From the IMG/VR virus record IMGVR_UViG_3300009011_000001, positions 124,001-188,000 of that record: a stretch of 64,000 bases of DNA; one strand, 5' to 3'. Every line of letters starts with the position of its first letter. The stretch's first letter is position 1. Below are positions 6,163 through 39,284 of the stretch, one piece after another. The notes under the pieces were generated by a model, which saw nothing but the letters and a program-made list of their open reading frames with translations, searched no databases and had not been told where the DNA came from. Position numbers and translations under genes: made by a program.

Positions 6163-6408
6163 ATGGAGCAGACTAAGTTTGTCTCGCTGGTCGAATCTGC
6201 TACAAACATGTTTATCAGTTACACTACGGCGATATTGGCTCAGGTCATTATCTTCCCATTCTACGACGTTCACGTTCAGCTGCATGAGAACATGTCGATG
6301 GCTTTGATCTTCGCCATCATCGGTTTCTTCCGCAACTACGGCGTTCGTCGCCTGTTCAACGCAGCACCATGGGTTAAGTTCAAAGGGGCAAAGAATGCGC
6401 AAAATTGA
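6163..6408 (+). CDS. small membrane protein
   Basis: AAGGA RBS; two hydrophobic helices; QTK..SLVE..N...RNYGVRRLFN pattern common in phages. Confidence 0.7.
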   Translation: MEQTKFVSLVESATNMFISYTTAILAQVIIFPFYDVHVQLHENMSMALIFAIIGFFRNYGVRRLFNAAPWVKFKGAKNAQN

Positions 6409-8353
6409 TTCGCAGTACAAAGATCTGTATCGCTTCATTCTTCAGCAAGGTCTGGCCAAGGCTAGCCGCACCGATATCGGCACTACGTCGGCGCTGGGCG
6501 GCTGGATGCGTTTCGATTTGCGTGACGATATCCTCCCGATCACGTCTCTGCGTCTGGTGCGCGAAGAGAAGTTCATCGGGGAGCAACTCTGGTTCGTCTC
6601 CGGCGATCCTTCGATCAAGTTCCTGAAGGACAACAACATCAGCATCTGGGATAGCTGGTTCATCCCAGGAACTGCCGTCTACGAAGACGAACAGCAATGG
6701 CGCCCAATTGTTGATGTGTTGCGGGAAGTATTCCGTTTGAAAATGGGCACTCAAATTTCAAACGATATCGTTTGCCACAAGCTGGCTACCGATACAGGCA
6801 TCTTTGCATTCCACGATCTCTTGTTCTGCATGGGGCTGGAAGATGGAGCTGATCACGTTAATCAGATCCATACCGAAAATGAATGCAACGGCTTCTCGAA
6901 AGAACAGATCGATGCCATTCGTACTCGTGCGACGGCGCTGGGCGTTGATGTGTCCTACTTGCCGAAGAAACCAATCGGCATTATCCAGCGTATTGCGCTG
7001 GCTAACGAAATGGGTCTGGGCGAAGAACTGTTCGAGTATTGCGACGGTCCAATGCCTCGTGAAGAAAAGGACACGATGTACGCGGAAGTAAACGTACAGT
7101 TGTGTCCAGAATTCACCGGCCCGTGGGATCTGTACCAATCCGAACTCGACCACATCGCCGAGTGGCTGACTTCGAAGAACGTTCCTACCGAAGTTCCTGC
7201 GCCACTAAAACCTGTCAGCCTGCAGACTCGTCTGAACCGGATCGACAAGAGCCAGTTCGGTCAGTGGAGCGCGATCAACCAGATCGTCTTCCCGCCTGTA
7301 GAAATGACGGCTGAACCAGCTCCTGAAGTCCGCACCAAAAAAGATGTCTTCGGCGAAGACGTTGTGGTGACGGCAGCGGCTGTGGAGGAAGAACCTCAGC
7401 CGAAACACACGCAGATCGAGATCTACTTCGAAGGTCGTTTCCAGAAAGTCGACATCAGCAAAGAACAGGCTGACGACATCTGGGAAATGATGGACATCAT
7501 GAAGATCCCGGCCTACCGTCTGGTCGACGCCAACATCGGCAAGGGTGGCTACGGCCCTCAGTGGCGTAACTGGCAGGACACTCAGATCGTTGACGGTTCT
7601 GAAGTTGAGCTGTACAAGTCCAAAGGTTACGAGTATGTCACTGAAGTAGACGACCTTGACTTCGGTCATCGTTTCTACGGAAAGGTGGTCATGCACCGCG
7701 ACATCGATCAGTTGGCAAATATGATCGATCTGCTGAAGACCGATCCGGACAACCGCCGCATCATCGTGTCTGCATGGAACCCGGGTCGTACTTGGCAGGC
7801 GGCTCTGCCTCCTTGCCACCTGTACTACCAGTGCGTGACCTACGAGAAAGATCTGCGTGACTACGAGGAAGACTTCGCGAAGCGCGATCTGACCGACAAG
7901 TATCTCGTCGGCCTGACTTCGATTCACGAAGGTGGCGAGCTCGATCCGGAAGATCCTGAAATCGAGAAGAAGTTCTTCGCTGCTGCGAAAGCCTTCGCTA
8001 TCGAGAATGGCATTCCGACTCGTTGGATCAGCATGGGTGTGGTACTGCGCAGCTGGGATACTCCGGCTGGTGGTGTGTTCAACACTCCGCAATACGCGGT
8101 GCTGTTGCGCATGATTGCTCATGTAACCAACATGGATGCTCGTGAACTGTTCATCGTTGGTATCGATGCGCATATTTACGACAACCAAATGGAAGCCATC
8201 GACGAGGTCATTTATACCGACTCTCCAGATGACTGCCCGCGTCTGTTCATCAAACGCGATGTTCAATCGATCGACGACTTCAACATCAGCGACTTCGAGC
8301 TGGTTGGTTATAACCCCGTGCCTAACACGAAGGTCATGCCGATCGCTCGCTAA
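6395..8353 (+). CDS. thyA: thymidylate synthase with large insertions
   Basis: RT.IGT, E.LWF, IWDSW, YGPQWRNW, RRIIVSAWNP, LPPCH, RS.D...FN, DAHIY. Confidence 0.95.
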   Translation: MRKIDSQYKDLYRFILQQGLAKASRTDIGTTSALGGWMRFDLRDDILPITSLRLVREEKFIGEQLWFVSGDPSIKFLKDNNISIWDSWFIPGTAVYEDEQQWRPIVDVLREVFRLKMGTQISNDIVCHKLATDTGIFAFHDLLFCMGLEDGADHVNQIHTENECNGFSKEQIDAIRTRATALGVDVSYLPKKPIGIIQRIALANEMGLGEELFEYCDGPMPREEKDTMYAEVNVQLCPEFTGPWDLYQSELDHIAEWLTSKNVPTEVPAPLKPVSLQTRLNRIDKSQFGQWSAINQIVFPPVEMTAEPAPEVRTKKDVFGEDVVVTAAAVEEEPQPKHTQIEIYFEGRFQKVDISKEQADDIWEMMDIMKIPAYRLVDANIGKGGYGPQWRNWQDTQIVDGSEVELYKSKGYEYVTEVDDLDFGHRFYGKVVMHRDIDQLANMIDLLKTDPDNRRIIVSAWNPGRTWQAALPPCHLYYQCVTYEKDLRDYEEDFAKRDLTDKYLVGLTSIHEGGELDPEDPEIEKKFFAAAKAFAIENGIPTRWISMGVVLRSWDTPAGGVFNTPQYAVLLRMIAHVTNMDARELFIVGIDAHIYDNQMEAIDEVIYTDSPDDCPRLFIKRDVQSIDDFNISDFELVGYNPVPNTKVMPIAR

Positions 8354-11264: not shown

Positions 11265-13469
11265 ATGAACCTCAATGCCGCTTCTTTGTTTGATCAGATC
11301 AAAGCACAGCTCAAAGATCAGCCCGCTTGTGTGCTCACGATCTATCGCTGGTTCTTCGAAAAGGATCAGCACGTCACGGTCGATATTCCGCTTGTCGACA
11401 AGATCCGTCATCTTCAAGGCGACGGCTTCACTTTCACGCTGGTGGAGGTCATGAGTGCAAGCGGTAAGTTGCGCTACCTGCGCACTGACTTGATGATGGC
11501 CTTTCCGAAACCGGTGGTCGTCAAACCTAGCGTTCTCAGCAATAGGTCAGAACTGCAACAGGAAGAACAACCGGTTCTCCCTTTGAGAACCGAGCCTTAC
11601 GTCCTCGGTGGTCGTGTGCCGGAAGCCATGGTCAAGCATCTTCAGAAGAATGCCGGTCTTCCAACCCGCCGCGCCAGCTCTAAAGTCGAGGACGAAGAAG
11701 CAGCATGATCAATTTCCGACAAACCGATCTTCCGATCTCCTACGAGCCCGTCATCGTCGACTTTCACGATATCAGACCGCCGAACGACGGTCCAATCTAC
11801 ACTGCAGTAATGCAGAAAGACGTTTTCACTGAAGCCATGGTCCGGCTCGATTACAAAGTGTACGGGACTTCGACTATCAGCGATAAGCATCTGCAAGTCG
11901 TCTATCTGCGCAAGGACATGTACGAGAAAGCTCAAGAAGACTTTCTCCGTTCCGATCGCAGTTCTATTGGCACATTTCGAGTGACCCCACAATGAGCAAG
12001 CGCACTAACCCTCACAAACAAGCAATGAAGAAACACGCCGCCGCCATGCACAATGCCCGTTACACGCTGAGCAAGGAGTTTGACGCTCTGGAAGCTGGCC
12101 GTAAGCGCTTCGTGGCCACAACGGCCAATGGCGGCATGGGCGTTGTAACGGAATCATCAAGCGTCTCCACAGGGACTCTGGCGGAGTTCATGGAGAACGG
12201 TAGCCCTGGTGACGTCTACGTTGAACGCGGCATCGAAGTTGTTAAAGACGCCGCCGGCGTGATCGCCGATGACAAACTGGTGATCGGTAACGAAATGAAA
12301 ACTTCGTTGCCACAAGGTTTGCACTTTGCCGGGCACGAACCTCGTGACTATCAATTGCCGGCCATTGCTGCAGCAGAAGCCATGGTGGGCGAACACATCC
12401 CTCGCGGTACCGTGGAAAACTCTGGCGGAATACTGTTTGTCTGTGACAGCATTTCCCCTCTACCGGTGGGTGAAGGCAGCATCGAAGACATTCATGGTGA
12501 ATTCGCGAAGCTGGTGGATGTTGGTCTGCCTTCGACTTTTGCTACGGGCCGATCCAGCGTTTCCGGCTGCTTGCCAGAAGAACTCGGCGTAGGTGCCAAA
12601 CTTCCTCCGGCAGTCATGGAAACCATTGAACGTCGTCTTTCCGAGGAATGAGTCGATGATCGAGAATCACGACAAAAATCAGGTCATCATGTCGGTCGAA
12701 AACTACGAGGCGTTGGTGATTGCCTCCAGTAAGGGCATCGGCATGCTGCCTCGTGAGCTGAATCGAATTAAGCGCCATGTGCGTAAGTTCAATTCGCCTC
12801 AGAAGGAAAAGCGCGCAGCACAGCTGAAAGATGAAGAAACCCGTAAGTGGTGCCTTCGTCAGGAAGCTACAAAGCTCGTAAAGACACATGAAGGCAAGAC
12901 CGTCATCGTTCTGTACAAGTATCCCGACAAGGCTCCTGTTGGCGTTCCAGGAACTCTGAAGGGGTATTCGTCACATGGCGTTGGTTTCGTTGCCGTGCGT
13001 CTCCACAGTCGCGAAATGAAACGCTGTATCCATCTGCTGGCAGAGTTTGTTCTGTCCGTAGAGGAGTACGAATCGATGCAACAAGTCGACATCGCTGAAC
13101 GTCGACGCGAAGCATTTAAACAACTCGCAGAAGAATATCCAAGCGCCTCTTTCGTGCACGAGCTTCGTCCTCAGTCCTAATGAGATGAGCCTTGCAGAGG
13201 TAATTAGGATGGAAACCGTGAGAGTGAATCGGCATCGCTTACTGGTGGGTGATCGGTTTGTTCTGCCTGAAGACCGAGATCGATTGCTCTACGAAGTACA
13301 GGGAAGTCATCCCGAGTCAGGTTTGTTGATCAGACGTATTAAGCATAGCTGGTACGGTTACATGCATCGCGAAACTGGGTTAGTCATTGGGAGTGAAAAG
13401 GGGAGCAGTCTAAAGGAACTGATGACGATTCCTTCGGTTGTTTTGATGCGAGAAGTTGATTTGGCATAA
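11265..13469 (+). CDS. run of five hypothetical CDSs (11265-11708, 11705-11995, 11992-12651, ~12656-13180, 13185-13469)
   Basis: Closely spaced or ATGA-overlapping junctions; no recognisable motifs. Confidence 0.65.
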
Positions 13470-13470
13470 G

Positions 13471-13504
13471 GCATAGAGGCAGGGCGTTTGCCCTGCCTCT
13501 ATGC
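13471..13504 (+). terminator. CATA...TATG-closed hairpin terminator
   Basis: GCATAGAGGCAGGGC-GTTT-GCCCTGCCTCTATGC followed by a T-rich tail. Confidence 0.85.
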
Positions 13505-13533
13505 TGTTTCATTTTCTTTTACTTACTTATTTA

Positions 13534-13547
13534 CAGCAATACATTAC
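13534..13547 (+). promoter_or_regulatory. putative early promoter driving the RKK-peptide operon
   Basis: CAGCAATACATTAC about 30 nt upstream of the GAGGAGG RBS. Confidence 0.65.
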
Positions 13548-13578
13548 GGTATAGACAAACGTAACCTGAGGAGGTTTC

Positions 13579-13806
13579 ATGTCTAAATATAATTCTCTTA
13601 GAAAGAAATACGACGGTCCTAAAAACGAGGACGAGGATAACGGTAGCGCCACAGATCCGGATGATAGCTTGGAGGAAAGGGATTTCGTCAGTCTAGACAA
13701 TTACTTTCATCCCAGAGCGCAGGCAGCCGATAGAGATGCAGCCCTGATCACGCGCAGTAAACAACGGGATGCTGACGTCGTCTATACTTTTAGCAGGTTC
13801 AGATAA
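13579..13806 (+). CDS. RKK-motif small charged protein 1
   Basis: GAGGAGG RBS; MSKYNSLRKKYD...DNGS. Confidence 0.75.
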   Translation: MSKYNSLRKKYDGPKNEDEDNGSATDPDDSLEERDFVSLDNYFHPRAQAADRDAALITRSKQRDADVVYTFSRFR

Positions 13807-14021
13807 TGGCCGATATAGATAGAAAGAAATACGACCCTCTTAAAGTTAGCGATATAGAAAATGGCTCAGGAAGCTATATCCCTGATGCACATCTGTGGTG
13901 TCCGTCGTCCAGGGATCCGGATAATCGAACGACTATCCTAGATCGGGATAGCGACGAGGCAAAAAATGTAAAGCGAGGATATAAGTTCATCGTCCACGCC
14001 AGCCACGTCAGGTGCGATTAG
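13806..14021 (+). CDS. RKK-motif small charged protein 2
   Basis: TAATG overlap; MADIDRKKYD...ENGS. Confidence 0.75.
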   Translation: MADIDRKKYDPLKVSDIENGSGSYIPDAHLWCPSSRDPDNRTTILDRDSDEAKNVKRGYKFIVHASHVRCD

Positions 14022-14022
14022 G

Positions 14023-14265
14023 ATGGATGTTCTCAGAAAGAAAATGCGCCTTCCATTGAGAGATGATCGCATAGAGTTAGGTCAGGATGCGAATGGCTGC
14101 TTTGAGCAGATGTGCAAGTGCGCAGGTCATGAGCCCATTCACGATTGGGATGCTGAGCCAGATGAAGACGTACTTTCGTGCGACGATCCTGATCTGAGCC
14201 ACGCCCGTTACGAAAGGATTCATCTCTCAGAGGCCAATAACGCATGGGACTTTACGGTGGAGTAA
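14023..14265 (+). CDS. RKK-motif small charged protein 3
   Basis: MDVLRKKM...ANGC...AWDFTVE. Confidence 0.75.
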   Translation: MDVLRKKMRLPLRDDRIELGQDANGCFEQMCKCAGHEPIHDWDAEPDEDVLSCDDPDLSHARYERIHLSEANNAWDFTVE

Positions 14266-14268
14266 GCG

Positions 14269-14487
14269 ATGCCAGCCAGAAGTAAAAAGTTTTTGGTTAA
14301 CGAACATACTGCCGGTTTGAGAGGCGGACTCCGCGCTTACAGCGAAGACATTGATAGAAAGGTCGGATCTGCCGAAATTTACACCTACGACTCTGAAGAG
14401 ACGGCGTACATCAGAGACAGGGATGATGGCGCACCCACCCGTTCAAAAATTGATCAATCCCCGAGGGATCGTGATGCACGACATTAG
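14269..14487 (+). CDS. RKK-motif small charged protein 4
   Basis: GGAG RBS; MPARSKKF. Confidence 0.65.
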   Translation: MPARSKKFLVNEHTAGLRGGLRAYSEDIDRKVGSAEIYTYDSEETAYIRDRDDGAPTRSKIDQSPRDRDARH

Positions 14488-14728
14488 ACGTAAGTCAATG
14501 CCGGCACGTTACGTGGGCGGATGCGAGGAAGGTCGCCAAACCCTAGACGATGAAGTCTCGATTCAGCGAACCCTGGATGGCGATCCCGAAACAGGTAACC
14601 GGCCGTTCGACGTTGAGCGTTATGACAAGAGTGTTCTCAAAGATGGAGATTTTCGGCGAAACTTTGAACGTGATCGGCAACTGAAACTACCCGACCGGGT
14701 ATGGACAAACAAATGGGCAAGAGAATAA
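14474..14728 (+). CDS. RKK-motif small charged protein 5
   Basis: GAGGG RBS; MHDIRRKS...GGCEEG. Confidence 0.7.
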   Translation: MHDIRRKSMPARYVGGCEEGRQTLDDEVSIQRTLDGDPETGNRPFDVERYDKSVLKDGDFRRNFERDRQLKLPDRVWTNKWARE

Positions 14729-14973
14729 GTGCTGATCGCAAGAAAAACCTTGTCTGGATTGGAGAAGAATTCGTCGCCCACGATAACGGCTTGAAAACTC
14801 CAGGAAACTATGGACGGTGTATCGAGGCTTTTGATGGTGTTCATCGAGAAGGTAACGAACCACGCGATAGAGAGCAGATCGAAAGCGTAAAGCTCGATAA
14901 CGATCGTTATAGAAGACTGGATATTTCGAACATGCACTTTCGAGATCCGTTGGAGGACTACACACGACCCTAG
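14713..14973 (+). CDS. RKK-motif small charged protein 6
   Basis: MGKRISADRKKN...DNG...GRC. Confidence 0.7.
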   Translation: MGKRISADRKKNLVWIGEEFVAHDNGLKTPGNYGRCIEAFDGVHREGNEPRDREQIESVKLDNDRYRRLDISNMHFRDPLEDYTRP

Positions 14974-14981
14974 GAGGCTGT

Positions 14982-15251
14982 ATGTATTTCGTAGATAGAA
15001 AGAACGACCAACCTTGTCGACCGTTACCGGGCGATTCTCGTGGCACTAGCACTTTGGAAGGACCAGTTCTTTATAAGTGGATAGGCGAAGGAGATAAAGC
15101 CGAAGGCTGCGGTGATGAAGACCCAGATGAAGTTAAGCGCCGGCAGGGCTATCTTCAGGACGGAGATGAGGATAGAGAGTGGCCTCAGAAAACACTGAGA
15201 GCGCAGTGCCGGCAATCAGACCTTAGTCTTTGGGATTGGACAGTAGAATGA
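14982..15251 (+). CDS. RKK-motif small charged protein 7
   Basis: AGGAGG RBS; MYFVDRKND...EGCG...LWDWTVE. Confidence 0.75.
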   Translation: MYFVDRKNDQPCRPLPGDSRGTSTLEGPVLYKWIGEGDKAEGCGDEDPDEVKRRQGYLQDGDEDREWPQKTLRAQCRQSDLSLWDWTVE

Positions 15252-16603
15252 AACACGATCCCCTTAGAAAGAAGGCAGAACGTTGGTTCATGTCTGTGGT
15301 AAATGGCAAAAACCCACGGGAAACATTGCCACCAGAAACATATTTGCATTACTGGATCCCTGACTATGTCGAAAGTGATCCAGAGCTTATTGTCCACGAA
15401 TCTGTACGCGTCCTCGATTTCGACAAATACCGAGCCTGTAATAATCCTTCATTTATCGGCTTCCCTGATGCAACAAATAACCAAGGAGTAAACATGAAAG
15501 GCGATTTCCTTCCTGTACCGCAATCCGAAGCTCTGATTGCAAACATCAATTCGTGGAACGATAAACTGGCGCTGCTGCGCGGCGATAACATCTACGATGT
15601 CTCCCGCCTGTTCTTCTCGTCCAAAGGCTGGAATGCTCACCAGTACAATCTGGTGGCCGACATTCCTTACGGCAGCAGCGTAGCCGAGAACGACCGCAAA
15701 GTGCTGAAGGTTGTTGAAGAAGAGATCCTCAAGCCGAAGGGTCTGCACTTCATTCGTACTTTGATGGGTCGTCTGGTCTGCAACGACACCGAAATCCTCG
15801 GCTCGTTCGTCAACCCAAGCAACAGCGCCACCCAGTCCAAGTACGACATCATCGGCACCGAAAAGCTGGCAAGCTATTTCCGCGATGTCTTCAAAGAACA
15901 CATCGACAACGGCAAGACTGCGTATCTGCGCCGTCTGACTCTGGCTGACCGTAACATCACGTCCACCATCGAGACCATCCCTCCGGTCGAAGGCATCCCG
16001 GACATCATGAAGTTCTACCCGTACTTCGAGCGCAGCCCTGAACAGCTTATCGCTGAGTTCATGGCCTCCACCTCGAACGTACTGCTGCTGATCGGCCCGC
16101 CGGGCACCGGTAAGTCCAACTACATCCTGCAAATGATGAAGGCCCGTGGCTGGGATGACAAGATCCACCTGGCTGACCGTGAAGACGTTCTTCTTAACCC
16201 TGGTCTGTCCGACTATGTGCGCAACTGCGAAGCCGGCTCTGTGGTCATCACGGAAGACTCCGATAAGTTGGTACGTTCCCGTGAGCAGGATAACGAGAAC
16301 ATGTCGGCGCTCCTCAATGCCACGGCAGGTATCGTTAGCCGCGATGTGAAGATCATCATCTCCACCAACCTGGAATCTCTGACCTATGTCGACAAGGCAC
16401 TGACCCGCCCCGGTCGTTGCTTCGATATTCTGAAATTCCAAAGCCTGACGACTCAGCAGGCGCTGGACGTGCGTGAAATGATGGGCCTGGAATACATGGA
16501 CATCGAAGAAAAAGAAGCGACTCTGGCAGAAGCTTTGAAGTACCACGAAATCCACCGTGACCGCGTACCGAAGAAACAAGCATTCGGTTTTGCGAGGGCG
16601 TAA
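15248..16603 (+). CDS. AAA+ ATPase (internal start at 15494) with an in-frame N-terminal RKK module 8
   Basis: ATGA overlap at 15248 (MKHDPLRKKA); AAGGAG RBS before ATG 15494; GPPGTGKS Walker A, VITEDSD Walker B, STN sensor, ALTRPGRC arginine finger. Confidence 0.85.
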   Translation: MKHDPLRKKAERWFMSVVNGKNPRETLPPETYLHYWIPDYVESDPELIVHESVRVLDFDKYRACNNPSFIGFPDATNNQGVNMKGDFLPVPQSEALIANINSWNDKLALLRGDNIYDVSRLFFSSKGWNAHQYNLVADIPYGSSVAENDRKVLKVVEEEILKPKGLHFIRTLMGRLVCNDTEILGSFVNPSNSATQSKYDIIGTEKLASYFRDVFKEHIDNGKTAYLRRLTLADRNITSTIETIPPVEGIPDIMKFYPYFERSPEQLIAEFMASTSNVLLLIGPPGTGKSNYILQMMKARGWDDKIHLADREDVLLNPGLSDYVRNCEAGSVVITEDSDKLVRSREQDNENMSALLNATAGIVSRDVKIIISTNLESLTYVDKALTRPGRCFDILKFQSLTTQQALDVREMMGLEYMDIEEKEATLAEALKYHEIHRDRVPKKQAFGFARA

Positions 16604-16658
16604 TGCTGTGACCCGTATGTCGTAGTCCTGAGGCTACGGCGCATTCTGTGAGGTGTGT

Positions 16659-16910
16659 ATGAGCGTTGTAGAATTGGAAGACCTGCGTCAAAATCTTCTC
16701 GCCATCCTCAAAGAAAAGATGAGTGACAAGATCTTCGACCATACGCCACATGGCGTATTGGCTGACTATCTAGAGGTTCCGTTGGCTGAGGTTTCGACCT
16801 TGATGACAGGGAACATGCTTAAACTTCAATTGTCGACCATCGTCGCCGTAGCCCATTTCTGCGGTAAACAAGTCCGAACAACACTGATAGAAGAAAAGGA
16901 AGTTGCTTGA
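16659..16910 (+). CDS. XRE/HigA-like helix-turn-helix protein
   Basis: LADYLEVPLAEVSTLMTG...L.TIV..A...GKQV pattern. Confidence 0.55.
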   Translation: MSVVELEDLRQNLLAILKEKMSDKIFDHTPHGVLADYLEVPLAEVSTLMTGNMLKLQLSTIVAVAHFCGKQVRTTLIEEKEVA

Positions 16911-17362
16911 TGTCGAACTTTATCAATAATCAAACAGGCAAGCCTGTCGAAGAAACCACCGTACTTTTGGAGGTCGGCGTACCTACGAGCATTAGCGGCA
17001 AAACCTACCTTTTAGATGCAAGCTTGCGTGCAGCAGTTCGCGCACTGCAAGGCAAGAAGATCCACATGCAGTTCGGCAGTCCCGGCAGCAACGCCAACGC
17101 TCTGGACCAAAGCCGTACCTGCGGCCTGATCGAGAACGTTCGTCTGATCGAATGCCGTCAGACGAAAGGCACTGGCGTTATCATCGGTGATGTGAAGCCA
17201 TGGGGTCCTTTCGGCGTCCATGTGCGCGATTGCATCAGCGGCGCCGAACCACATCCTTCGTACTACGGCCTGCACGCCATGGTCAGCGCTCCAGTCGGTG
17301 GCGATGGCATGGTGCGGTCTGTTCGAGAAATCGTCAGCTGGTACATGGTCAGTAAGAACTAA
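16907..17362 (+). CDS. hypothetical protein, possible degenerate prohead-protease-fold homolog
   Basis: IIGDVKPWGPFG...YYGLHA...IVSWY resembles phiKZ-type head protease segments; catalytic residues not evident. Confidence 0.35.
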   Translation: MMSNFINNQTGKPVEETTVLLEVGVPTSISGKTYLLDASLRAAVRALQGKKIHMQFGSPGSNANALDQSRTCGLIENVRLIECRQTKGTGVIIGDVKPWGPFGVHVRDCISGAEPHPSYYGLHAMVSAPVGGDGMVRSVREIVSWYMVSKN

Positions 17363-17368
17363 GTAAAA

Positions 17369-17399
17369 CATACAGGCTGGGACAACCCCAGCCTGTATG
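17369..17399 (+). terminator. CATA...TATG-closed hairpin terminator
   Basis: CATACAGGCTGGG-ACAAC-CCCAGCCTGTATG. Confidence 0.75.
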
Positions 17400-17456
17400 C
17401 CGTTTGGTGACTTGATACAAAGTACACAAGAAGTATGTCCACCAGCCCTGGGGGCT

Positions 17457-18131
17457 ATGATGATTGATAACGTAGTGAGTATCACGAAGTACAAGAAGGC
17501 CGATGACGAACTTACGTTCATGCATGAGTTTAAGATGCCTCCGGATGCTCTACTCATGGACTTTCCGATGCAGCTCGAGCTGCTGAAAGATCGCTGTTGG
17601 GGCTTGTGTAACAGCGGCAATCCCTCTGGCATCCACATCCATCGGTTACTTGGCCTGACTGAGAAGATGTTCGCAAACATCTGTTTTTCGTTAGACGAGC
17701 CTTTGTTCATGCGGATCTATAAAGATCCGAAAAACGAACTTGTCTTCATGGTTCGTGTGCTTTCAAATTACCTGTTTGAAATAGGTAATGCTGTCAAAAA
17801 AGGAAGCCCCGAACCCAAGCCTCTCTTCGATGCCAAGATCTATTTCTTCGAAATGACGTGCGATCATCCAGAAATGTTCATCGAACCTCCGGCGGTTATG
17901 GCCGGCGAGATTGTTGAGCACTGGCACCTCCCGGCTAGTTTCTACGGCCGGGCATCAGAGCAGTTAACTGATCGCATCGTCAAGAACATGAATACGGTCA
18001 CCACAACGAACTGCGGCTTTGCAAAGATTGTAGATAACACGTACGTGGCAGTGATTCCTCACAGTGAGAAGTATTGCATTCTGATGACGCTTTGCCTGAA
18101 AGATAACCTTCCGACTAATGGAGTAGAGTAA
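17457..18131 (+). CDS. hypothetical protein
   Basis: ORF; start placed downstream of the hairpin. Confidence 0.65.
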   Translation: MMIDNVVSITKYKKADDELTFMHEFKMPPDALLMDFPMQLELLKDRCWGLCNSGNPSGIHIHRLLGLTEKMFANICFSLDEPLFMRIYKDPKNELVFMVRVLSNYLFEIGNAVKKGSPEPKPLFDAKIYFFEMTCDHPEMFIEPPAVMAGEIVEHWHLPASFYGRASEQLTDRIVKNMNTVTTTNCGFAKIVDNTYVAVIPHSEKYCILMTLCLKDNLPTNGVE

Positions 18132-19264
18132 TGCCTTTAATCGTTACAGACGAAGATACGAACTTCCTTGTCCAGAATATCAATCTGGCTCGGAAAGTAG
18201 ACAAGCTGCCGGCGATGGTTTATACGCCGGTAATGACCGACGAAGGTCCTCGTCTGATCAAAGGTCGTGAAAGCTTCGAAGTACCTGAAAACCCTCTGGG
18301 CGACCACAACGTCATCCGTGACCTGATCATCAGCGATTACAACAGCGTCAAGTCGCCGGTCGGTGTGATCTTGGTGGGCCTCAAGGGCTCCGGCAAGACC
18401 ATGTTGTCTGAAGACCTGTGCAACAAGATCCTGGAAACCGGTCGCCCTGTACTGAACGTCACCAGCCCTCTGCCGGGCGGTATCCTCTCCACCATGATCG
18501 ACCTGCTCGGGCCATGCGCCGTGCTGTTCGACGAATTCGGTAAAGTCTACGACGACTCCGAGAAACGTAACACTGTGCTGACTCTGTTCAGCGACTCCGA
18601 AAAGCGCAACATCCTCTTTATCGTTACGGCCAACAGCGAGCGCGAATTCGTCGACGCCATGCTGAACCGCCCTGGTCGCTTCAAGTACCGCGTGAACTAC
18701 GACGGTATTAAAGAAAAGACCGTGATGGACACCATCAGCCACAAGGACCATTCCCCTGAGCTGCTCGAGTATCTGCGCCTATATTCGACCTATCACGCGA
18801 TCAGTTACGACATGCTGCTTCTGATGAAGAAGCTGTTGAAGAAGTGCAAGACTCCGCAGGACTTCATCGACAAGATCGAGTTCTACAACCTGCCGGCCAA
18901 GGTCAACGTTCGTTACGGCGTGAAGTCCGTGACCTATGGCGGGAGCACCAGCGAATATAAAGGCTGGATCGATATCCAGGAAGACGGGTCCCTGCAGCTG
19001 GAACTTACCAATGTCGCCAATGGCGAAGTGGTACATAGCCAGAAACTGGTCTGGGCCGATGTAGAAAAGGTCAAGCGCGGCAACTTCTGGCAGCTCAAGT
19101 TCGACGACTCTTTCAAGATCGAGGTGGAACGAGATGTCAGCGAGCACACATTTCGGCCGAAAGAAAGGGATCATGGTACTCCCAAGTATCAAGGGTTCCG
19201 CCACCCGGAAGACGACCTGGAATTCCGTCAAAACGATTACAAGGAACCTGTGAAACGGTTCTAG
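18131..19264 (+). CDS. AAA+ ATPase
   Basis: GLKGSGKT, VLFDEF, VTAN, NRPGRF. Confidence 0.9.
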   Translation: MPLIVTDEDTNFLVQNINLARKVDKLPAMVYTPVMTDEGPRLIKGRESFEVPENPLGDHNVIRDLIISDYNSVKSPVGVILVGLKGSGKTMLSEDLCNKILETGRPVLNVTSPLPGGILSTMIDLLGPCAVLFDEFGKVYDDSEKRNTVLTLFSDSEKRNILFIVTANSEREFVDAMLNRPGRFKYRVNYDGIKEKTVMDTISHKDHSPELLEYLRLYSTYHAISYDMLLLMKKLLKKCKTPQDFIDKIEFYNLPAKVNVRYGVKSVTYGGSTSEYKGWIDIQEDGSLQLELTNVANGEVVHSQKLVWADVEKVKRGNFWQLKFDDSFKIEVERDVSEHTFRPKERDHGTPKYQGFRHPEDDLEFRQNDYKEPVKRF

Positions 19265-19273: not shown

Positions 19274-19295
19274 GGGCAGTAACACATTACTGCCC
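19274..19295 (+). promoter_or_regulatory. promoter motif embedded in an inverted repeat
   Basis: GGGCAGTAA-CACA-TTACTGCCC contains CAGTAACACATTAC. Confidence 0.6.
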
Positions 19296-19327
19296 TGATC
19301 TCAACCATCACTCTACCAGGAGTAAGC

Positions 19328-22688: not shown

Positions 22689-23993
22689 ATGAAAGTCACT
22701 TACCACAAAGTCGAATTCCCGATCGATCAACTTCTCGAACAAAACCTGCCCTGGTCTCGTAATTTCTACACCGATCAGAACGAACTCAAGTCCGACGTCA
22801 CCGACCTGTTCGAGTTCTTCATCAAGAACAAAGACAATCTGCCGTTCTACAACCTGACTGAGCGTGAAGGCGTCCACATCCAACAGGTGGCGAACGCGTC
22901 GTACGAAGTCATGCTGCAAGCCGTGCGGTATGCGTTCGACCACCCTGACCTGATTCGTCAGTACTTCGATTGCAAGATGCTGAACAGCCCGGCTGGCGAT
23001 GCGTTCATCGCGTACGCCAAGTGGACGCTCGGTCAGATCAACATGCGCGGTCAGTCGCTGTACTCTCGCTTCGACATGGCGTTCGATCCGGTCAGTGGTA
23101 CCGTAAAAGGTATCTACGAGCTGAATGCCGATACGCCAACCATGTTGTTCGAATCGACTACGCTGCAGGACGAGTTGGTTCGCCAGATCACGGGCGAAGA
23201 CAATCAGTTCAATAACTGGTTCGAAAACATCGCGGCCACTCTGAAAGAAACTCTGAAGGGTGTGTATAAAGGCAACAAGTTCGGCGTCGTTTTCGATAGC
23301 AACTATATCGAAGACACCACTACCTGCGAGATCATCAGCGATCTGCTGGAAGAGCCGACTGCCTGCATGATGGTCGACATCAAGCACCTGGACTACGAAG
23401 ATCTGCAACCTTCCCGTCCATGGATCGCTTACGAACACACGCTCGATGGCATGTTCATCCTGTCGCCGTGGGAAGAGATGGTCGTCAACTTCCCGAAAGC
23501 CTGGCTGCATTGGGAATCGTGGTGCAACAACGTCGTGGTTATGGAACCGGCCTGGAAATGGTTCATGTCCAACAAAGGCATTTTGGCCCTGGTCAGCGAT
23601 CTGCTTGAAAAGGGCCTCATCGGCCACGGCTTCGAAGCACCTCTGTTACCATTCCTGCACACCAGCCTCAGCCAACACCGCTTCGAAGGTCAGTTCTACG
23701 TCTCTAAGCCGAAGGTCGGCCGGATGTCGAACAACATCACGTTGTACGGCGACGATGGTTACGCGGTGGTTTCCACTGGCGGCGACTACCTCGACGAGAC
23801 CAAGGTCTTCCAGGAATACTGCCCAGCCGGTTCTCTGCGTGAAGGCACTAACTTCATCGTCAGCGTCTGGATGGAAGGTGGAAGTCCGGTCACCAAGATC
23901 GCCAAAGCGACGAACATCGCTATCCGCGAATTCGATACGCATGTGTCGAATGTGCAGAATGAGCGATTCGTTCCTCACGTCGTTGTGGAATGA
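22689..23993 (+). CDS. glutathionylspermidine synthase family (YgiC/YjfC-like ATP-grasp ligase)
   Basis: LYSRFD, YELNADTPT, PWE, MEPAWK...NKGILA, YV.KP..GR..NNI, FVPH. Confidence 0.92.
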   Translation: MKVTYHKVEFPIDQLLEQNLPWSRNFYTDQNELKSDVTDLFEFFIKNKDNLPFYNLTEREGVHIQQVANASYEVMLQAVRYAFDHPDLIRQYFDCKMLNSPAGDAFIAYAKWTLGQINMRGQSLYSRFDMAFDPVSGTVKGIYELNADTPTMLFESTTLQDELVRQITGEDNQFNNWFENIAATLKETLKGVYKGNKFGVVFDSNYIEDTTTCEIISDLLEEPTACMMVDIKHLDYEDLQPSRPWIAYEHTLDGMFILSPWEEMVVNFPKAWLHWESWCNNVVVMEPAWKWFMSNKGILALVSDLLEKGLIGHGFEAPLLPFLHTSLSQHRFEGQFYVSKPKVGRMSNNITLYGDDGYAVVSTGGDYLDETKVFQEYCPAGSLREGTNFIVSVWMEGGSPVTKIAKATNIAIREFDTHVSNVQNERFVPHVVVE

Positions 23994-24166: not shown

Positions 24167-27100
24167 CAAATGCTTTTGATTTGAAATCGTTCTTGGCTGG
24201 GTTTCTGAAGAATCGCCAACAGAAAGGTCCAGAAGAGTCTGTGAAGTATCGGCTCCGAAACCTCGCTGGTGGTCCAGAAGCATTGGAAGGCTACGAGTGG
24301 GTCGTGAATGAAGTAACGATTCCCTGCGTGTCTCAGAATCACGCTGAACGTACAGTTGAGCGTATGCGCCTGGATACTACTCGCGTCGTCGGCACTTCGG
24401 TTATTGAAACAGTTTCTGGTCCGATTGTTCGAGCGTATTTGCTGAATCGTGCGCTCTGCATTCATCAGTTAGATAACATTCCGGTTCGTAAACTGAGTCC
24501 GATTGGCGACACCATGCTGTTTGGCATTGTCAATCCCTCCAAGGCAGTGGTTCGGTACGTTCTCGATGGCGGAACTTCTGAGATCAACATGAACCCCGCT
24601 TTTGAAGCGCCAGTGAACAAACGCACGGCAATACATTACTAGGCTGTATAACAACACAAAGGAGCGTAGTGGGATGACCATCCAGTCTGTGTCTGTAAAG
24701 AAACGTTTACCGCCCGATGAAGAATTGGAGATGGAGATTGAAATCCGTGGCCAGGACGGTGCAGGTAAGACGTTGATTGCCGCCATGCTCCAAGAGACTT
24801 TGGAATTCGCCGGCTTCAAGAACGTCACCATCGTTTCTGCCGTTGGGGATGCCGCAAAGACTCGGCGGCGCCTGAATCGCATTGACCTGCGTGATCAGCG
24901 GTGCCTTAAAACACACATCCGAATTCTGGATGAAGATAAACCCATTGTGAAGGAGGGAGCAGAAAGCCAGTCGAACGGTAGCCTCACTAAACTTCTGAAC
25001 ATATTCCGATAGCCGCAAGGATTCAACGTGAATACTGAAATCATCAACTACATCGCCCAGCGTAAACCGCGCGGGGTAACGACACCTTACGATTCGACTT
25101 CCGCCACGATTGAAACGATCGTCAAGGGGTCTCGCTTCTTTCCGGCATTTAAAGCCTTCGCCGCAGTCCATAGCGTCCTCAAAGATTTTGTTTCTGCTGC
25201 TGAGCTGAACTGGCAGTTAAAGACCAACATCGAAGTCGACTGCACGAAAGAAGAAGGCCTGACGTTTTCCATCAAGACCTGCATGGATGAAGAAGAGCCG
25301 CTGAATGTTTCGACGTTCATGCAGCTGAAGGCATTCGAACATCCAGAGCCTGTGGTGTCGCGCCCTATCTCCGGTCCTGAACTTGGACCACTGCATCTTC
25401 AGATCGGTCGGCACTATAAGGAACACAACTACCCGCCTGCCAGCATCTTTTGGTCGCTGTCGTCGTGGTTCCAGAGCGCCGGTTGGTTGTGCGACGATTT
25501 CCTTTTCGATGGCGTGAAACACAAAGTTCGTTTCATGTTCATCGAACCGGTTACTCGCAAGCAGACATTTGAAGCAGTCATTGACTTCAGCGTCATGATT
25601 TCAGATTGCGAGATCGCCAACCGTCCAGAGCCTGAGCCGGAACCCGTTCCGGAACCAGAGCCTGAGTACAAGATGGAGAACGTCTACATCCTCCCTCACG
25701 CTCGCGACACTTACGGCCGGCCGTTGATAGACAGTGGTATTTATCGCTTTCTGACCGATGGTGAAACGATCCGTTGGGAAAACGTTACCAGTGAATCTTT
25801 CCCAGGGCTTGGAACCACTTACGTCCGCATGGGCAAGTTCATGCTTCATGACAAGTTCCTCAAGCGCACGTTCGATTTGTTCGACGAATACAAAGACGCC
25901 GGTCTGGACTTTGTTTCGATGGCTCGTTTCTGCCACCAGCAGGTCGATCCAAACGAAATCTTCCGTGAGCAGTACTCGCAACCGTAATTGTTGTATCCCA
26001 CAAAACCTTTGGAGTTAGTCGCAATGACAACCCTAGCTACTATTGAACAACCAGAAGCCCACAACCACACGCTAGATGATGTTCTTGAACATCACGCCGA
26101 TCAGCAGGATCCGGGTATTCGCGCCCGGTCTGCTGTAGCCAGCCGTGCAGCAGCCGCTGCCAAAGTGGCAAAGCGAATCCTGTACAGAACGATTGCTTTC
26201 ATTCTCTTCATCTCCGTCGTCGTTATTGGTGCCGGTGGCTATTACGTTTACGCCACCAGCACCAAAGGTTACGTCACCGATCATCGAAGCTGTGAACTCG
26301 ATGTAGGCGGTTACACCGTTACAGGGGAACGCACCTACAGTTATCCTTACACGGATTTCTTGATGTGGCGAAATATCGACAAGACCACCGTTACGGAAAA
26401 GACCCTTATTGATGTCAAGGGTACGGCCATGACAGTGGTGGGTATCACGGGCGAAGACTCTGTCGTCACGTCCATCGGAGAAGGCGAGCGAGGTACGGCG
26501 GTCATTAAAGCTGCCGACACGTACGTCTTCATGATCAACAAGAAGGTCGCTTCAAAGTCTTACAAAACTTTCTGCAAGTAAAGGGGAATGTAAATGTCAA
26601 GTGCCCAAAAGTCTTTGCTGGCCGACACCCATCACGAAATCCTCGCCACACTCAAACGCCTTGAGGAAGCTGGCGACATCGCAGAAGAGGCGGTTCATTT
26701 CTTCCGCGAAAAGGTTCGGCAGAATGGCAGTAACATTCTCAGCCTTTACATCCTGGACGTGACGCGTCCGAAGATGGAAGACGGAGAGTACCGTGTAAAG
26801 GTCCACAAAGAACTGACCCTCATGAAGGATTTCAGTCAGCTCGTCGCAACTCCTTTGCTCAACCACCCTCCGCGCAACTTGACTCAAGACGAGGTCAAGC
26901 TTCTGTTTGATGAACTCCGAGATACGGGGGAACAGAAAGATGAGCAACATTCCTAAAGGTACCGTTACGGCGATCACGGTTGCCAATGGTCGCGAAGATG
27001 TTCTTGCGAAGCTTGAGAAGTATCGCATGAACGACTTGCTGACCAGGTCCGAGATGGCGGTGTTCATTGCGAAGATGGACGCCAACACCGGCAGCGTTAT

Positions 27101-38579: not shown

Positions 38580-38667
<88 letters not shown>

Positions 38668-38751
38668 CGAATTATCGGCCGCGACTTTATAGTTGCTGGG
38701 AAACCTTATCCGAGTATAAACGGATCGGCCGGCCTTGCTTTAAAAGTTTGT

Positions 38752-38828
38752 TGGGGTATAGCTCAGTCCGGTAGAGCAGCGGGTTTTGATCCCGCTTGTC
38801 ATAGGTTCGAATCCTGTTGCCCCTGCCA
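38752..38828 (+). tRNA. tRNA-Gln(TTG)
   Basis: GCGGG-TTTTGAT-CCCGC anticodon arm, TTCGAAT, GCCA end. Confidence 0.9.
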
Positions 38829-38833
38829 TGTTC

Positions 38834-38975
38834 GGAGAAGCGTTCGGTTACGGAGTGGTTGAACGTTGATATATCGGGTAACTACCGATTGGATACATGA
38901 GCTAGAGTGGAAGTCGCCTGCCATGGGGCCATGACTATTCATCCGCGAGTTCGAATCTCGCCTGTCCGCTTCTCC
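38834..38975 (+). ncRNA. tRNA-like RNA with expanded central domain and no CCA
   Basis: GGAGAAGCG/CGCTTCTCC closing stem; D-like ACG-GAGTGGTTGAA-CGT; T arm GCGAG-TTCGAAT-CTCGC. Confidence 0.65.
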
Positions 38976-38987
38976 TTACCTTGTAAT

Positions 38988-39063
38988 TCCGCGATAGCTC
39001 AGTTGGTAGAGCAAACGGCTGTTAACCGTTTGGTCCCTGGTTCGAGTCCAGGTCGTGGAGCCA
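38988..39063 (+). tRNA. tRNA-Asn(GTT)
   Basis: AACGG-CTGTTAA-CCGTT; canonical cloverleaf; GCCA. Confidence 0.95.
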
Positions 39064-39194
39064 ATTTGCTGCGGTCCCTTTGAGGGGCAGATACCGTGGA
39101 TTGTCATGACAGCTTACACCGTCCGGCGGAGTCTTGACTAATAGAGTGATGGGTTAAAACCCTGAGCGATGCCGGAGACTATTTCTTGCTTTAC

Positions 39195-39284
39195 GGTGAA
39201 TTGGTCGAGTGGCCTATGGCGGCGGCTTGCTAAGCCGTTGACCCTTAACCGGGTCCGAGAGTTCGAATCTCTCATTCACCTCCA
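39195..39284 (+). tRNA. tRNA-Ser(GCT)
   Basis: GCGGC-TTGCTAA-GCCGT; long variable arm; CCA. Confidence 0.92.

What the first reader, a model, noticed from the sequence alone, without database searches (positions are those of the whole stretch)
13534..15493. Operon of eight hypervariable RKK-motif charged peptides (candidate undescribed system)
Seen: after a terminator, a promoter motif and a strong RBS come eight translationally coupled ORFs of 71-89 aa. Each has a basic motif within the first ~11 residues: SLRKKY, IDRKKY, VLRKKM, ARSKKF, IRRKS, ADRKKN, VDRKND, PLRKKA. Further shared patches are RKKYD...(D/E)NGS (1, 2), NG/GC motifs (3, 5, 6, 7) and near-identical C-termini WDFTVE/WDWTVE (3, 7). 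The bodies are D/E/R-rich, poor in hydrophobic residues and otherwise divergent. The DNA is purine-rich with AGA/AGG/ATA/GAT codons, unlike the C-ending codons of the downstream ATPase. Inference: this is a duplicated and diversified library with a constant tag and variable body. Candidates are anti-defence decoys or sponges, substrates or adaptors of the linked AAA+ ATPase, or RiPP-like precursors for one of the phage ATP-grasp ligases. I recognise no known family.
Basis: partly seen in the sequence, partly recalled or inferred. Interest (0 to 1): 0.85.

Follow-up and report, generated by a model that had tools for sequence, protein, structure and literature searches.

The report
Tagged small-protein array beside phage ATPase
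A giant phiKZ-like phage carries a row of seven tiny, floppy, fast-evolving proteins that all begin with the same Arg-Lys-Lys tag, and an eighth copy is built into the front of the neighbouring Bcs1-like AAA+ ATPase. The family is real, conserved in related phages and undescribed, but its job is still unknown.

Summary
The array is real, with one correction. There are seven stand-alone ORFs of 71-90 aa (13579-15251). The "eighth" has no in-frame stop at 15493. It is the N-terminal 82 residues of the 451-aa AAA+ ATPase ORF (15248-16603).

All eight units share D-[VI]-x-R-K-K near the N-terminus. Most also share G-x-x-T, D-P-[DE] and D-x-D-x-x-R, and several end in [DN]-[YFW]-T-x-[EP].

Arrays of 3-10 such units lie directly upstream of the orthologous ATPase in all ten related metagenomic phage loci examined. 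Arg codons differ between phages (AGA versus CGN), so the motif is conserved as protein. pN is far below pS, so the ORFs are coding, but they evolve 2-6 times faster than the ATPase.

The last unit is fused to the ATPase in two separate lineages and is a separate gene in the others. The units are predicted disordered. The ATPase body resembles Bcs1 and YjoB, which are chambered AAA+ machines.

No Pfam, PHROGs, NCBIfam, PADLOC, PDB or Rfam match exists. A profile search of 1.84 billion proteins found only the family itself.

Best reading (confidence 0.45): these are diversified disordered partners (clients, adaptors or regulators) of the ATPase, recognised through short terminal motifs. The RiPP and capsid-targeting readings are not supported.

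The parts
13470..13505 (+). Intrinsic terminator closing the upstream 94-aa gene
   Evidence: 16-bp stem with 10 GC pairs, followed by a T-run. It is conserved in L007, L008 and L010.
13539..13554 (+). Phage-type promoter-like motif ATACATTAC-N6-G
   Evidence: Six copies of RYACATTAC-N6-G occur in the window, all on the + strand, against 0.33 expected. The element is conserved upstream of the first unit in L007, L008 and L010. Its resemblance to vRNAP early promoters (AT-rich element, start site 6 nt downstream; PMC5312081) is an inference.
13568..13574 (+). Shine-Dalgarno GAGGAGG of unit 1
   Evidence: Read directly from the sequence.
13579..13806 (+). Unit 1, 75 aa (tag SLRKKY)
   Evidence: Its orthologue in L007 is 41% identical, with pN 0.50 and pS 0.73.
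13806..14021 (+). Unit 2, 71 aa (tag DIDRKKY); absent from L007
   Evidence: The start overlaps the stop of unit 1 (TAATG).
14023..14265 (+). Unit 3, 80 aa (tag DVLRKKM; ends WDFTVE)
   Evidence: Its L007 orthologue is 48-53% identical.
14269..14487 (+). Unit 4, 72 aa (degenerate tag ARSKKF)
   Evidence: Its L007 orthologue is 64-65% identical, with pN 0.20 and pS 0.78.
14474..14728 (+). Unit 5, 84 aa (tag DIRRKS; ends NKWARE); overlaps unit 4 by 14 nt
   Evidence: Its L007 orthologue is 62-63% identical.
14701..14973 (+). Unit 6, 90 aa, or 86 aa from the ATG at 14713 (tag ADRKKN; ends EDYTRP)
   Evidence: Its L007 orthologue is 59% identical, with dN/dS 0.13. The AF2 model has mean pLDDT 49.7.
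14982..15251 (+). Unit 7, 89 aa (tag FVDRKND; ends WDWTVE)
   Evidence: Its L007 orthologue is 62-63% identical. Its stop overlaps the next start (ATGA).
15248..15493 (+). Unit 8 (tag DPLRKKA): not a separate ORF but the N-terminal 82 residues of the ATPase reading frame
   Evidence: There is no in-frame stop. It aligns with the family motifs. GC3 is 0.41, against 0.70 in the ATPase core. pLDDT is below 50. It is also fused in L007, in P0003 (judged from its 451-aa length and full-length match to the query) and in L004. It is a separate gene in L008, L009, L010, L027, L028 and L029.
15483..15496 (+). Internal SD AAGGAG, 5-nt spacer and in-frame ATG: a possible second start giving a 369-aa ATPase
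Evidence: It is homologous to the intergenic SD of L008 and L010, where the last unit has its own stop.
15494..16603 (+). Core of the Bcs1/YjoB-like AAA+ ATPase (phiKZ gp208 orthologue)
   Evidence: PF00004 at 1.6e-8 and phrog_14322 at 8e-114. It is 40% identical to phiKZ gp208. The best PDB sequence hits are Bcs1. The AF2 model is confident over residues 90-445. The top Foldseek hits are Bcs1 (E down to 1e-11) and YjoB (E = 5e-10 to 3e-9), over about 330-420 aligned columns.
16653..19264 (+). Rest of the probable operon: an 85-aa ORF, a 150-aa weak Peptidase_S80-like ORF, a 244-aa ORF and a second AAA ATPase (377 aa)
   Evidence: No + strand terminator lies between 13505 and 19646, and the next promoter motif is at 19282. 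The same gene order is seen in L007, L008, L010 and L031.

Best explanation
The locus encodes a phage-specific family of small (about 65-115 aa), charged, intrinsically disordered proteins. They are arranged as a tandem, translationally coupled array, probably transcribed from one phage promoter together with a Bcs1/YjoB-like AAA+ ATPase.

Every unit carries short linear motifs. All have an N-terminal D-[VI]-x-R-K-K. Most also have G-x-x-T, D-P-[DE] and D-x-D-x-x-R. In the window's sub-clade several have a C-terminal [DN]-[YFW]-T-x-[EP]. The sequence between the motifs diverges quickly, and units are gained and lost.

I infer that the units are partners of the ATPase. They would be clients held or threaded by its chambered ring, or adaptors or regulators tethered to it through the terminal motifs. 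Each variable body would then supply a different specificity. The last unit can act in cis as the ATPase's own N-terminal tail or in trans as a separate protein.

Shown: the family, its motifs, that it is coding, its synteny, the recurrent fusion, predicted disorder, and the fold class of the ATPase.

Inferred: physical interaction with the ATPase, early expression, and an accessory (host-takeover or counter-defence) role.
For: 1. The family is real. The 36-sequence alignment has R in 34 of 36, K in 35 of 36 and K in 33 of 36 at the tag positions, plus shared downstream motifs.
2. Conservation is at the protein level. The window uses AGA-AAG-AAR and L004 uses CGN-AAR-AAR for the same motif.
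3. The ORFs are coding. pN is 0.20-0.50 against pS 0.73-0.85 for the six free units compared between the window and L007; the fused unit 8 has pN 0.28 against pS 0.52.
4. Synteny is strict. In all ten RKK-bearing loci examined besides the window (L004, L007, L008, L009, L010, L027, L028, L029, L031, L032) the array lies directly upstream of the orthologous ATPase, with 3-10 copies.
5. The fusion recurs. The last unit is in frame with the ATPase in the window clade and, separately on the ATPase tree, in L004. It is free in the sister and basal lineages. In the window the fusion still contains the ancestral intergenic SD.
6. The units are predicted disordered: AF2 pLDDT 49.7, ESM model pLDDT 0.33, and ATPase residues 1-82 below 50.
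7. The ATPase body matches Bcs1 and YjoB over both its domains. The N-domains of YjoB build a client chamber (PMC9565160).
8. There is one probable transcription unit from 13539 to about 19264.
9. phiKZ gp208 is non-core, and its knockdown did not reduce plaques (PMC12571901). This fits an accessory role.
Against: - No interaction was tested, and no multimer prediction was available.
- Fusion and synteny show a functional link but not its nature.
- The ATPase occurs widely in phiKZ-like phages that have no recognisable RKK units, so it does not need them.
- The C-terminal motif is absent from many units.
- If the ATPase itself bears the tag, the tag may address a third party rather than the ATPase.
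- There are no expression data for any RKK-bearing phage.
- Atypical codon usage rich in rare codons could mean low expression.
Confidence: 0.45

Rival explanations
1. The tag is an address for a third party. The RKK motif (with D-P-[DE]) would dock the small proteins, and in some phages the ATPase too, onto a common site. Candidates are the phage-nucleus shell or its import machinery, ribosomes, nucleic acid or a host complex. The units would then act there independently of the ATPase, for example as decoys or inhibitors.
For: The ATPase carries the same tag in three phages. That fits co-targeting better than a substrate degron. The tag is the only element conserved across the whole clade. 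The promoter resembles early vRNAP-type promoters.
Against: Within the 64-kb window and the flanks of seven relatives, no other bona fide protein carries the tag. The three outside hits are one overlapping ORF, one 206-aa ORF with DRKKK, and a helicase whose N-terminus is conserved for other reasons. Published import work reports no linear signal; this is from my own recollection and was not checked here. Strict adjacency to the ATPase is left unexplained.
Confidence: 0.25
2. The units are stand-alone anti-defence or host-takeover effectors that merely share an accessory-gene hotspot with the ATPase. The motifs would then be what remains of common ancestry, plus constraints on folding or stability.
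For: The region has fast evolution, copy-number turnover, accessory status and a homing-endonuclease insertion next to it in L007.
Against: RKK is retained with almost no change across lineages whose ATPases are only 49% identical, while the rest of each unit is unrecognisable. This argues for a specific shared function. Two independent fusions to the ATPase also argue against it. There are no PADLOC or other hits.
Confidence: 0.1
3. The conserved N-terminus reflects a constraint on translation or on the nascent chain, for example stabilising ribosomes that translate very acidic, rare-codon ORFs. On this reading the products have little function of their own, and the ORFs serve mainly to couple translation into the ATPase.
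For: The ORFs are tightly coupled, with overlapping stops and starts. Rare codons are frequent. The products are predicted disordered.
Against: pN is well below pS along the whole ORFs, and the internal motifs G-x-x-T, D-P-[DE] and D-x-D-x-x-R are conserved. The ATPase has its own strong SD. In L008, L010 and L027 the ATPase is preceded by an intergenic gap.
Confidence: 0.08
4. The units resemble T4 internal proteins. The N-terminal tag would be a capsid-targeting sequence that loads them into the prohead for injection, followed by removal of the tag by the prohead protease.
For: The architecture is the same as the T4 IP loci: a tandem array of variable number, a shared tag of about 10 aa and unrelated bodies (my own knowledge of T4). 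A weak Peptidase_S80-like gene lies in the operon.
Against: Neither phiKZ-type S/A/G-x-E sites nor T4-type L/I-x-E sites are enriched after the tag. Observed frequencies are 0.22 and 0.11, against 0.23 and 0.14 in shuffles. The tag also sits on an AAA ATPase. The phage's phiKZ_IP internal head protein genes are elsewhere, at 54646-57045.
Confidence: 0.05
5. The units are RiPP precursors or Pup-like protein modifiers, processed or ligated by a phage ATP-grasp enzyme.
For: They are small and disordered, and several end in Glu. A GSP_synth-type ATP-grasp gene lies at 22689-23990.
Against: The ATP-grasp gene is 7 kb outside the operon and was not found in the downstream flanks of L007, L008 or L010. 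No RiPP enzyme or recognition-element domain is nearby. C-termini vary (E, P, S, D, H, R, N), with no GG[QE]. One unit is fused to an ATPase.
Confidence: 0.04

Closest known systems
T4-type internal proteins with a capsid-targeting sequence (IPI, IPII, IPIII and the variable IP loci of T-even phages)
   Same: These are tandem arrays of variable number. They encode small, fast-evolving, charged phage proteins that share only a short N-terminal tag, with otherwise unrelated bodies (my own knowledge of the T4 literature).
   Different: There is no sequence relationship. No protease site follows the tag. The tag is also found on an AAA+ ATPase. Further internal motifs are shared. Packaging is untested.
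Bcs1 (mitochondrial AAA translocase of the folded Rieske protein) and Bacillus subtilis YjoB (chambered AAA+ chaperone); this comparison concerns the ATPase
   Same: These are the best sequence and fold matches. The alignments cover both the N-terminal beta-rich domain and the AAA domain. Walker A is GPPGTGKS, there is an ITEDSD Walker-B box, and an RPGR arginine-finger region is present.
   Different: Identity is only 12-16% and TM-scores are 0.28-0.43. There is no membrane anchor. Instead there is a disordered 82-residue RKK unit or nothing. Oligomeric state and clients are unknown.
AAA+ adaptors that tether through short terminal peptides (for example SspB to the ClpX N-domain)
   Same: The principle is the same: a flexible protein whose short conserved terminal motif docks on an AAA+ machine while another part selects the cargo. 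SspB and ClpX are cited in PMC9565160.
   Different: There is no homology. The docking is hypothetical here. The units are wholly disordered rather than having a folded cargo-binding domain.
Pup / UBact (disordered bacterial ubiquitin-like tags recognised by an AAA ATPase)
   Same: Both are small, acidic, disordered proteins encoded next to an AAA+ ATPase, and some end in Glu.
   Different: There is no GG[QE] terminus and no PafA/Dop-type ligase in the operon, and the C-termini vary.
Small-ORF arrays upstream of the same ATPase in Phabio (PHABIO_302-306), L024, L025 and L030
   Same: The position, orientation, size range and charged composition are the same. The L030 units begin with an R-K-E-E variant of the tag.
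   Different: The family profile does not detect the arrays of Phabio, L024 or L025 (best E = 0.2-1 in a 310-ORF set); L030 was fetched afterwards and was not scored. Homology of these arrays is therefore plausible but unproven.

Membership tests
RKK-unit family (defined here, alignment A3) | D-[VI]-x-R-K-K (or a one-residue variant) within the first 16 residues | tested here: met
   All eight window units carry it. Five are exact RKK; the others are SKK, RRKS and RKN.
RKK-unit family (defined here, alignment A3) | Internal motifs G-x-x-T, D-P-[DE] and D-x-D-x-x-R, in that order | tested here: met
   They are aligned in most units of the window and of L007, L008, L010, L004 and L027. The Asp aligned to D66 of the first sequence is conserved in at least 90% of sequences. 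Individual motifs are missing from some units.
RKK-unit family (defined here, alignment A3) | Location in a tandem array directly upstream of the gp208-type ATPase | tested here: met
   This holds for the window and for ten related loci.
Any curated protein family (Pfam, PHROGs, NCBIfam, PADLOC) | Significant profile match | tested here: not met
   Units 1-7 gave no family with an E-value below 0.06. The profile search of 1.84 billion representatives returned only family members plus one spurious repeat protein.
Bcs1/YjoB-like AAA+ (the ATPase) | Classic AAA domain with Walker A, Walker B and an arginine finger, preceded by a beta-rich N-domain | tested here: met
Bcs1/YjoB-like AAA+ (the ATPase) | N-terminal membrane anchor (Bcs1 proper); heptameric or hexameric chamber | not testable with these tools
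   The N-terminus is charged and predicted disordered rather than hydrophobic. The oligomer could not be modelled.
T4-type CTS internal proteins | Prohead-protease cleavage site closing the tag | tested here: not met
   Site frequencies equal those of shuffled sequences.
RiPP precursor | Co-located, co-conserved modifying enzyme | tested here: not met
   No such gene lies in the operon or in the relatives' flanks. The ATP-grasp gene is 7 kb away.
Pup-like modifier | Conserved C-terminal GG[QE] and a neighbouring ligase | tested here: not met
   The C-termini are listed. The neighbours are listed.
Diversity-generating (DGR-type) hypervariable locus | Template/variable repeat pair and a reverse transcriptase | tested here: not met
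   The locus holds no repeat longer than 25 nt, and none of the searched neighbours (11992-13466 and 15248-19261) matched a reverse transcriptase. Divergence is spread over whole ORFs, with pN below pS.

The most novel reading that the evidence does not exclude
The D-[VI]-x-R-K-K tag is a cargo signal read by a Bcs1-like, chamber-forming AAA+ machine of a nucleus-forming phage. The machine would load, hold or translocate a changing repertoire of disordered effector proteins, for example across the phage-nucleus shell or onto a host target. The fused copy would be the machine's built-in cargo or plug. This would be a new, genetically tractable protein-delivery module in jumbo phages.
Probability: 0.12. 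Interest if true: 0.85.

Novelty: new variant of a known kind. Interest (0 to 1): 0.6.

Why it matters
Nucleus-forming jumbo phages must sort proteins between compartments and disarm hosts, yet most of their genes have no assigned function.

This locus pairs a Bcs1/YjoB-type chambered AAA+ ATPase with a diversifying set of disordered proteins that share a six-residue tag. Twice in evolution one of them has been welded onto the ATPase. That gives a concrete, testable handle on the function of the gp208-type ATPase, which is widespread in phiKZ-like phages and unexplained. The handle consists of a tag, a partner and natural fused and unfused variants.

If the tag proves to be a recognition signal, it would be a compact tool for directing proteins in infected cells. 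If not, the locus is still a clear case of motif-anchored rapid evolution of small phage proteins.

Tried and rejected
- Megablast of the locus against GenBank phages found no match. tblastn of units 5 and 7 also found none.
- Pfam, PHROGs, PADLOC and NCBIfam gave nothing for units 1-7.
- Rfam gave nothing in the locus except sub-threshold matches to the terminator hairpin.
- I considered that AGAAAGAA is a nucleic-acid signal. It occurs 17 times in the window against 3.2 expected, and five copies sit at unit starts. I rejected this because L004 encodes the same R-K-K with CGN codons and the motif is always in frame.
- A leave-out profile built from L004, L008 and L010 recovered only three window units weakly. 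Whole-length homology is therefore at the edge of detection, and the case rests on motifs plus synteny.
- The family profile against the small ORFs of Phabio, L024 and L025 was not significant.
- The ESM Atlas gave no informative neighbours.
- The AF2 model of unit 6 was low confidence, so no fold search was attempted on it.
- The metagenome-contig scan with the ATPase alignment returned mostly distant or short loci. Relatives were instead fetched protein by protein.
- The prohead-protease site test was negative.
- An N-terminal FDFYRKK on the L004 helicase looked like a tagged protein. The helicase N-terminus (M-x-D-S-F-R-K/S...) is conserved in phiKZ and L025, which have no RKK family (Phabio's is a more divergent variant), so I treat it as coincidence.
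- A PDB sequence search with the 150-aa S80-like protein found nothing significant.
- Literature searches for gp208, Bcs1 with phage nucleus, and Phabio found no description of the array.

Full report
**Identity of the window.** The window is part of a 248.6-kb uncultivated viral contig, IMGVR_UViG_3300009011_000001. The ATPase next to the finding is 54% identical to the "putative ATP-binding protein" of Pseudomonas phage Phabio and 40% identical to phiKZ gp208. Phabiovirus belongs to the Chimalliviridae. The window also holds phiKZ-type internal head protein genes. It is therefore a phiKZ-like jumbo phage. That it builds a phage nucleus is an inference from this kinship.

**The observation.**
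- The terminator (13470-13505), the strong SD and the first ATG (13579) are as described.
- Seven + strand ORFs of 75, 71, 80, 72, 84, 90 and 89 aa follow. Their junctions range from a 28-nt overlap to an 8-nt gap.
- The eighth "peptide" is not a separate ORF. The TAA at 15489-15491 is out of frame. The frame starting at the ATG at 15248 continues to 16603 and encodes a 451-aa protein whose residues 279-397 are a classic AAA domain.
A shorter 369-aa form may also be made.
- The codon contrast is real and sharp. In the small ORFs GC3 is 0.47, AGR is 27 of 62 Arg codons and ATA is 5 of 21 Ile codons. In sixteen other genes GC3 is 0.66, AGR is 11 of 241 and ATA is 7 of 302.
- The contrast changes inside the long ORF at about 15494, from GC3 0.41 to 0.70.
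- The purine richness follows largely from the D/E/K/R/G/N-rich composition together with AGR codons.

**Is it a family?**
- Pairwise similarity within the window is weak. The best pairs are units 5 and 7 (E = 4e-4) and units 1 and 2 (E = 2e-3) in a tiny database.
- A profile built only from distant phages recovers three window units at E = 0.002-0.007.
- The decisive evidence comes from relatives fetched through the ATPase.
- Directly upstream of the orthologous ATPase, L007 (ATPase 77% identical) has six free units plus a fused one.
- L008 and L009 (63%) have six, and L010 (61%) has five.
- L029 (62%) has four or five.
- L004 (57%) has six plus a fused one.
- L027 (49%) has three, and L028 has ten.
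- A 36-sequence alignment gives R in 34 of 36, K in 35 of 36 and K in 33 of 36 at the tag positions. D at -3 occurs in 20 of 36 and V or I at -2 in 17 of 36. The alignment also shows G-x-x-T, D-P-[DE], D-x-D-x-x-R and, in the window's sub-clade, a terminal [DN]-[YFW]-T-x-[EP].
- Among 541 ORFs of at least 60 aa in eight loci, 40 have RKK at residues 4-15, and 37 of these are array units or ATPase N-termini.

**Protein or nucleic-acid signal?** In the window five units use the same AGAAAGAA string. L004 spells the same motif CGG/CGT/CGA/CGC-AAR-AAR. Conservation is therefore at the protein level.

**Are the ORFs coding?**
- Between the window and L007, positional orthologues are 41-65% identical. 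For the six free units compared, pN is 0.20-0.50 against pS 0.73-0.85; for the fused unit 8, pN is 0.28 against pS 0.52.
- The ATPase core is 82% identical, with pN 0.12.
- L008 against L010 gives the same picture.
- The ORFs are thus under purifying selection but change 2-6 times faster than the ATPase.
- Unit 2 has no counterpart in L007.
- Clear within-phage duplicates exist, such as L008 units 1 and 2 at 42% identity.

"Hypervariable" in a mechanistic sense is not supported. There are no long repeats and no reverse transcriptase among the neighbouring genes searched.

**How wide is the family?**
- A profile search of 1.84 billion representative proteins returned ten hits. Eight were training sequences. 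One was a new member, which also lies in an array beside the ATPase. One was an unrelated repeat protein.
- Pfam, PHROGs, NCBIfam, PADLOC and GenBank phages have nothing.
- On the ATPase tree the RKK-bearing loci are paraphyletic within a well-supported 26-sequence clade.
- A derived 12-sequence sub-clade, which includes Phabio, has small charged ORFs in the same place but no recognisable tag.
- L030, at the base of that sub-clade, has six units starting with R-K-E-E.
- The array therefore looks ancestral to the clade and has drifted beyond recognition in part of it.

**The link to the ATPase.**
- The last unit is fused in frame in the window clade (the window, L007 and P0003; for P0003 this is judged from its 451-aa length and full-length match) and in L004.
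- It has its own stop and an intergenic gap in L008, L009, L010, L029, L027 and L028.
- The fused lineages are separated on the tree by unfused ones, and the basal lineages are unfused. The fusion therefore arose at least twice.
- In the window the fused linker still contains the ancestral SD: GGAGTAAAC-ATG, against GGAGTTAAC-ATG in L008.
- Recurrent fusion plus strict adjacency is the strongest available evidence that units and ATPase work together.

**Structure.**
- Unit 6 modelled with the family alignment has mean pLDDT 49.7, with one short helix.
- The ESM Atlas model has pLDDT 0.33.
- In the 451-aa ATPase model, residues 1-82 are below 50, while residues 90-445 are confident (overall pLDDT 80.7, pTM 0.71).
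- Foldseek places Bcs1 first (E down to 1e-11), then B. subtilis YjoB (E = 5e-10 to 3e-9). Both align over about 330-420 columns, which covers the beta-rich N-domain and the AAA domain, at 12-16% identity and TM 0.28-0.43. Proteasomal Rpt subunits and p97 follow.
- Sequence search agrees.
- The N-domains of YjoB form an internal chamber needed for its client-specific chaperone activity (PMC9565160). Bcs1 holds a folded client in a comparable chamber; this last point is from my own knowledge.

**Transcription.**
- No sigma-70 consensus is present, as expected for this phage group.
- The element ATACATTAC-N6-G at 13539-13554 is conserved upstream of the first unit in L007, L008 and L010. In L007 a GIY-YIG gene has been inserted between the terminator and this element.
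- RYACATTAC-N6-G occurs six times in the window, always on the + strand, against 0.33 expected.
- Early vRNAP promoters of phiKZ-related phages are extended AT-rich elements with the start site 6 nt downstream (PMC5312081). An early promoter is therefore a reasonable but untested reading.
- No + strand terminator lies between 13505 and 19646, and the next promoter motif is at 19282.
- The probable operon therefore runs through the array, the ATPase, an 85-aa ORF, a weak Peptidase_S80-like 150-aa ORF, a 244-aa ORF and a second AAA ATPase. This order is kept in relatives.

**Interpretation.**
- The best-supported model is that the units are disordered partners of the Bcs1/YjoB-like ATPase, recognised through short linear motifs, with variable bodies (confidence 0.45).
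- The tag may instead address a third party to which the ATPase is co-targeted (0.25). The presence of the tag on the ATPase itself favours this reading.
- The capsid-targeting rival fails the protease-site test.
- The RiPP or Pup-like rival lacks any linked enzyme and any conserved C-terminus.
- A purely translational role is contradicted by selection along whole ORFs.
- In phiKZ, gp208 is listed as non-core. Its antisense knockdown did not reduce plaques and only weakly lowered ChmA (PMC12571901). This fits an accessory, host-dependent role.

**Verdict.** This is a real, conserved and undescribed small-protein family with an unusual, twice-evolved fusion to a chambered AAA+ ATPase. Its function is unknown.

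Noticed in passing
window 13539-13554, 19282-19297, 24631-24646, 39910-39925, 40994-41009, 51717-51732 (+): The motif RYACATTAC-N6-G recurs six times, all on the + strand, against 0.33 expected by chance. Copies lie mostly 30-50 nt upstream of start codons. It is probably a phage RNA-polymerase promoter class.
   Followed up: partly
window 13185-13469 (+): A 94-aa gene lies immediately upstream of the array. It is far more conserved than its neighbours (93% identical to L007, dN/dS 0.05) and has no family match.
   Followed up: partly
L007 1316-1915: A GIY-YIG / I-TevI-like homing endonuclease gene is inserted between the terminator and the array promoter in the nearest relative. It is absent from the window.
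   Followed up: no
window 16907-17362 (+): A 150-aa protein gives a weak, sub-threshold match to Peptidase_S80 (the phiKZ prohead-protease family) and to head-maturation-protease PHROGs. It sits between two AAA ATPases and is conserved in that position in relatives.
   Followed up: partly
window 18131-19264 and 49433-50941 (+): There are two further AAA-family ATPases. The first (377 aa, phrog_2376) is p97/NVL-like by sequence and closes the probable operon. The second is 502 aa.
   Followed up: partly
window 22689-23993 (+): A glutathionylspermidine-synthase-type ATP-grasp protein (PF03738, E = 3e-43). It is not linked to the array in relatives.
   Followed up: partly
window 38580-39375 (+): A tRNA cluster. 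ARAGORN calls Tyr, Gln, Asn and Ser. Rfam adds a fifth tRNA-like match at 39292-39375. None reads the AGR or ATA codons that are enriched in the array.
   Followed up: no
window 6395-8353 (+): A 652-aa ORF whose C-terminal part is thymidylate synthase. It carries a long N-terminal extension, and relatives have 739-744-aa versions.
   Followed up: no
L004 4800 (-); L002 2895 (-); window 60521 (-): The divergently placed SNF2/DEAD helicase (phiKZ gp203 family) has a conserved N-terminus, M-x-D-S-F-R-K. In L004 it reads FDFYRKK, which resembles the unit tag. This is probably coincidence, but it is a conceivable evolutionary source of the tag.
   Followed up: partly
window 45478-46098 (+): A 206-aa ORF starts MDLFRWFDRKKK. 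It is the only other plausible gene in the window with an RKK-like N-terminus, and its function is unknown.
   Followed up: no
window 13579-15251 versus L007: Synonymous differences in the units (pS 0.73-0.85) exceed those of the flanking genes (0.48-0.59). This suggests different codon preferences, or partial non-orthology or recombination within the array.
   Followed up: no
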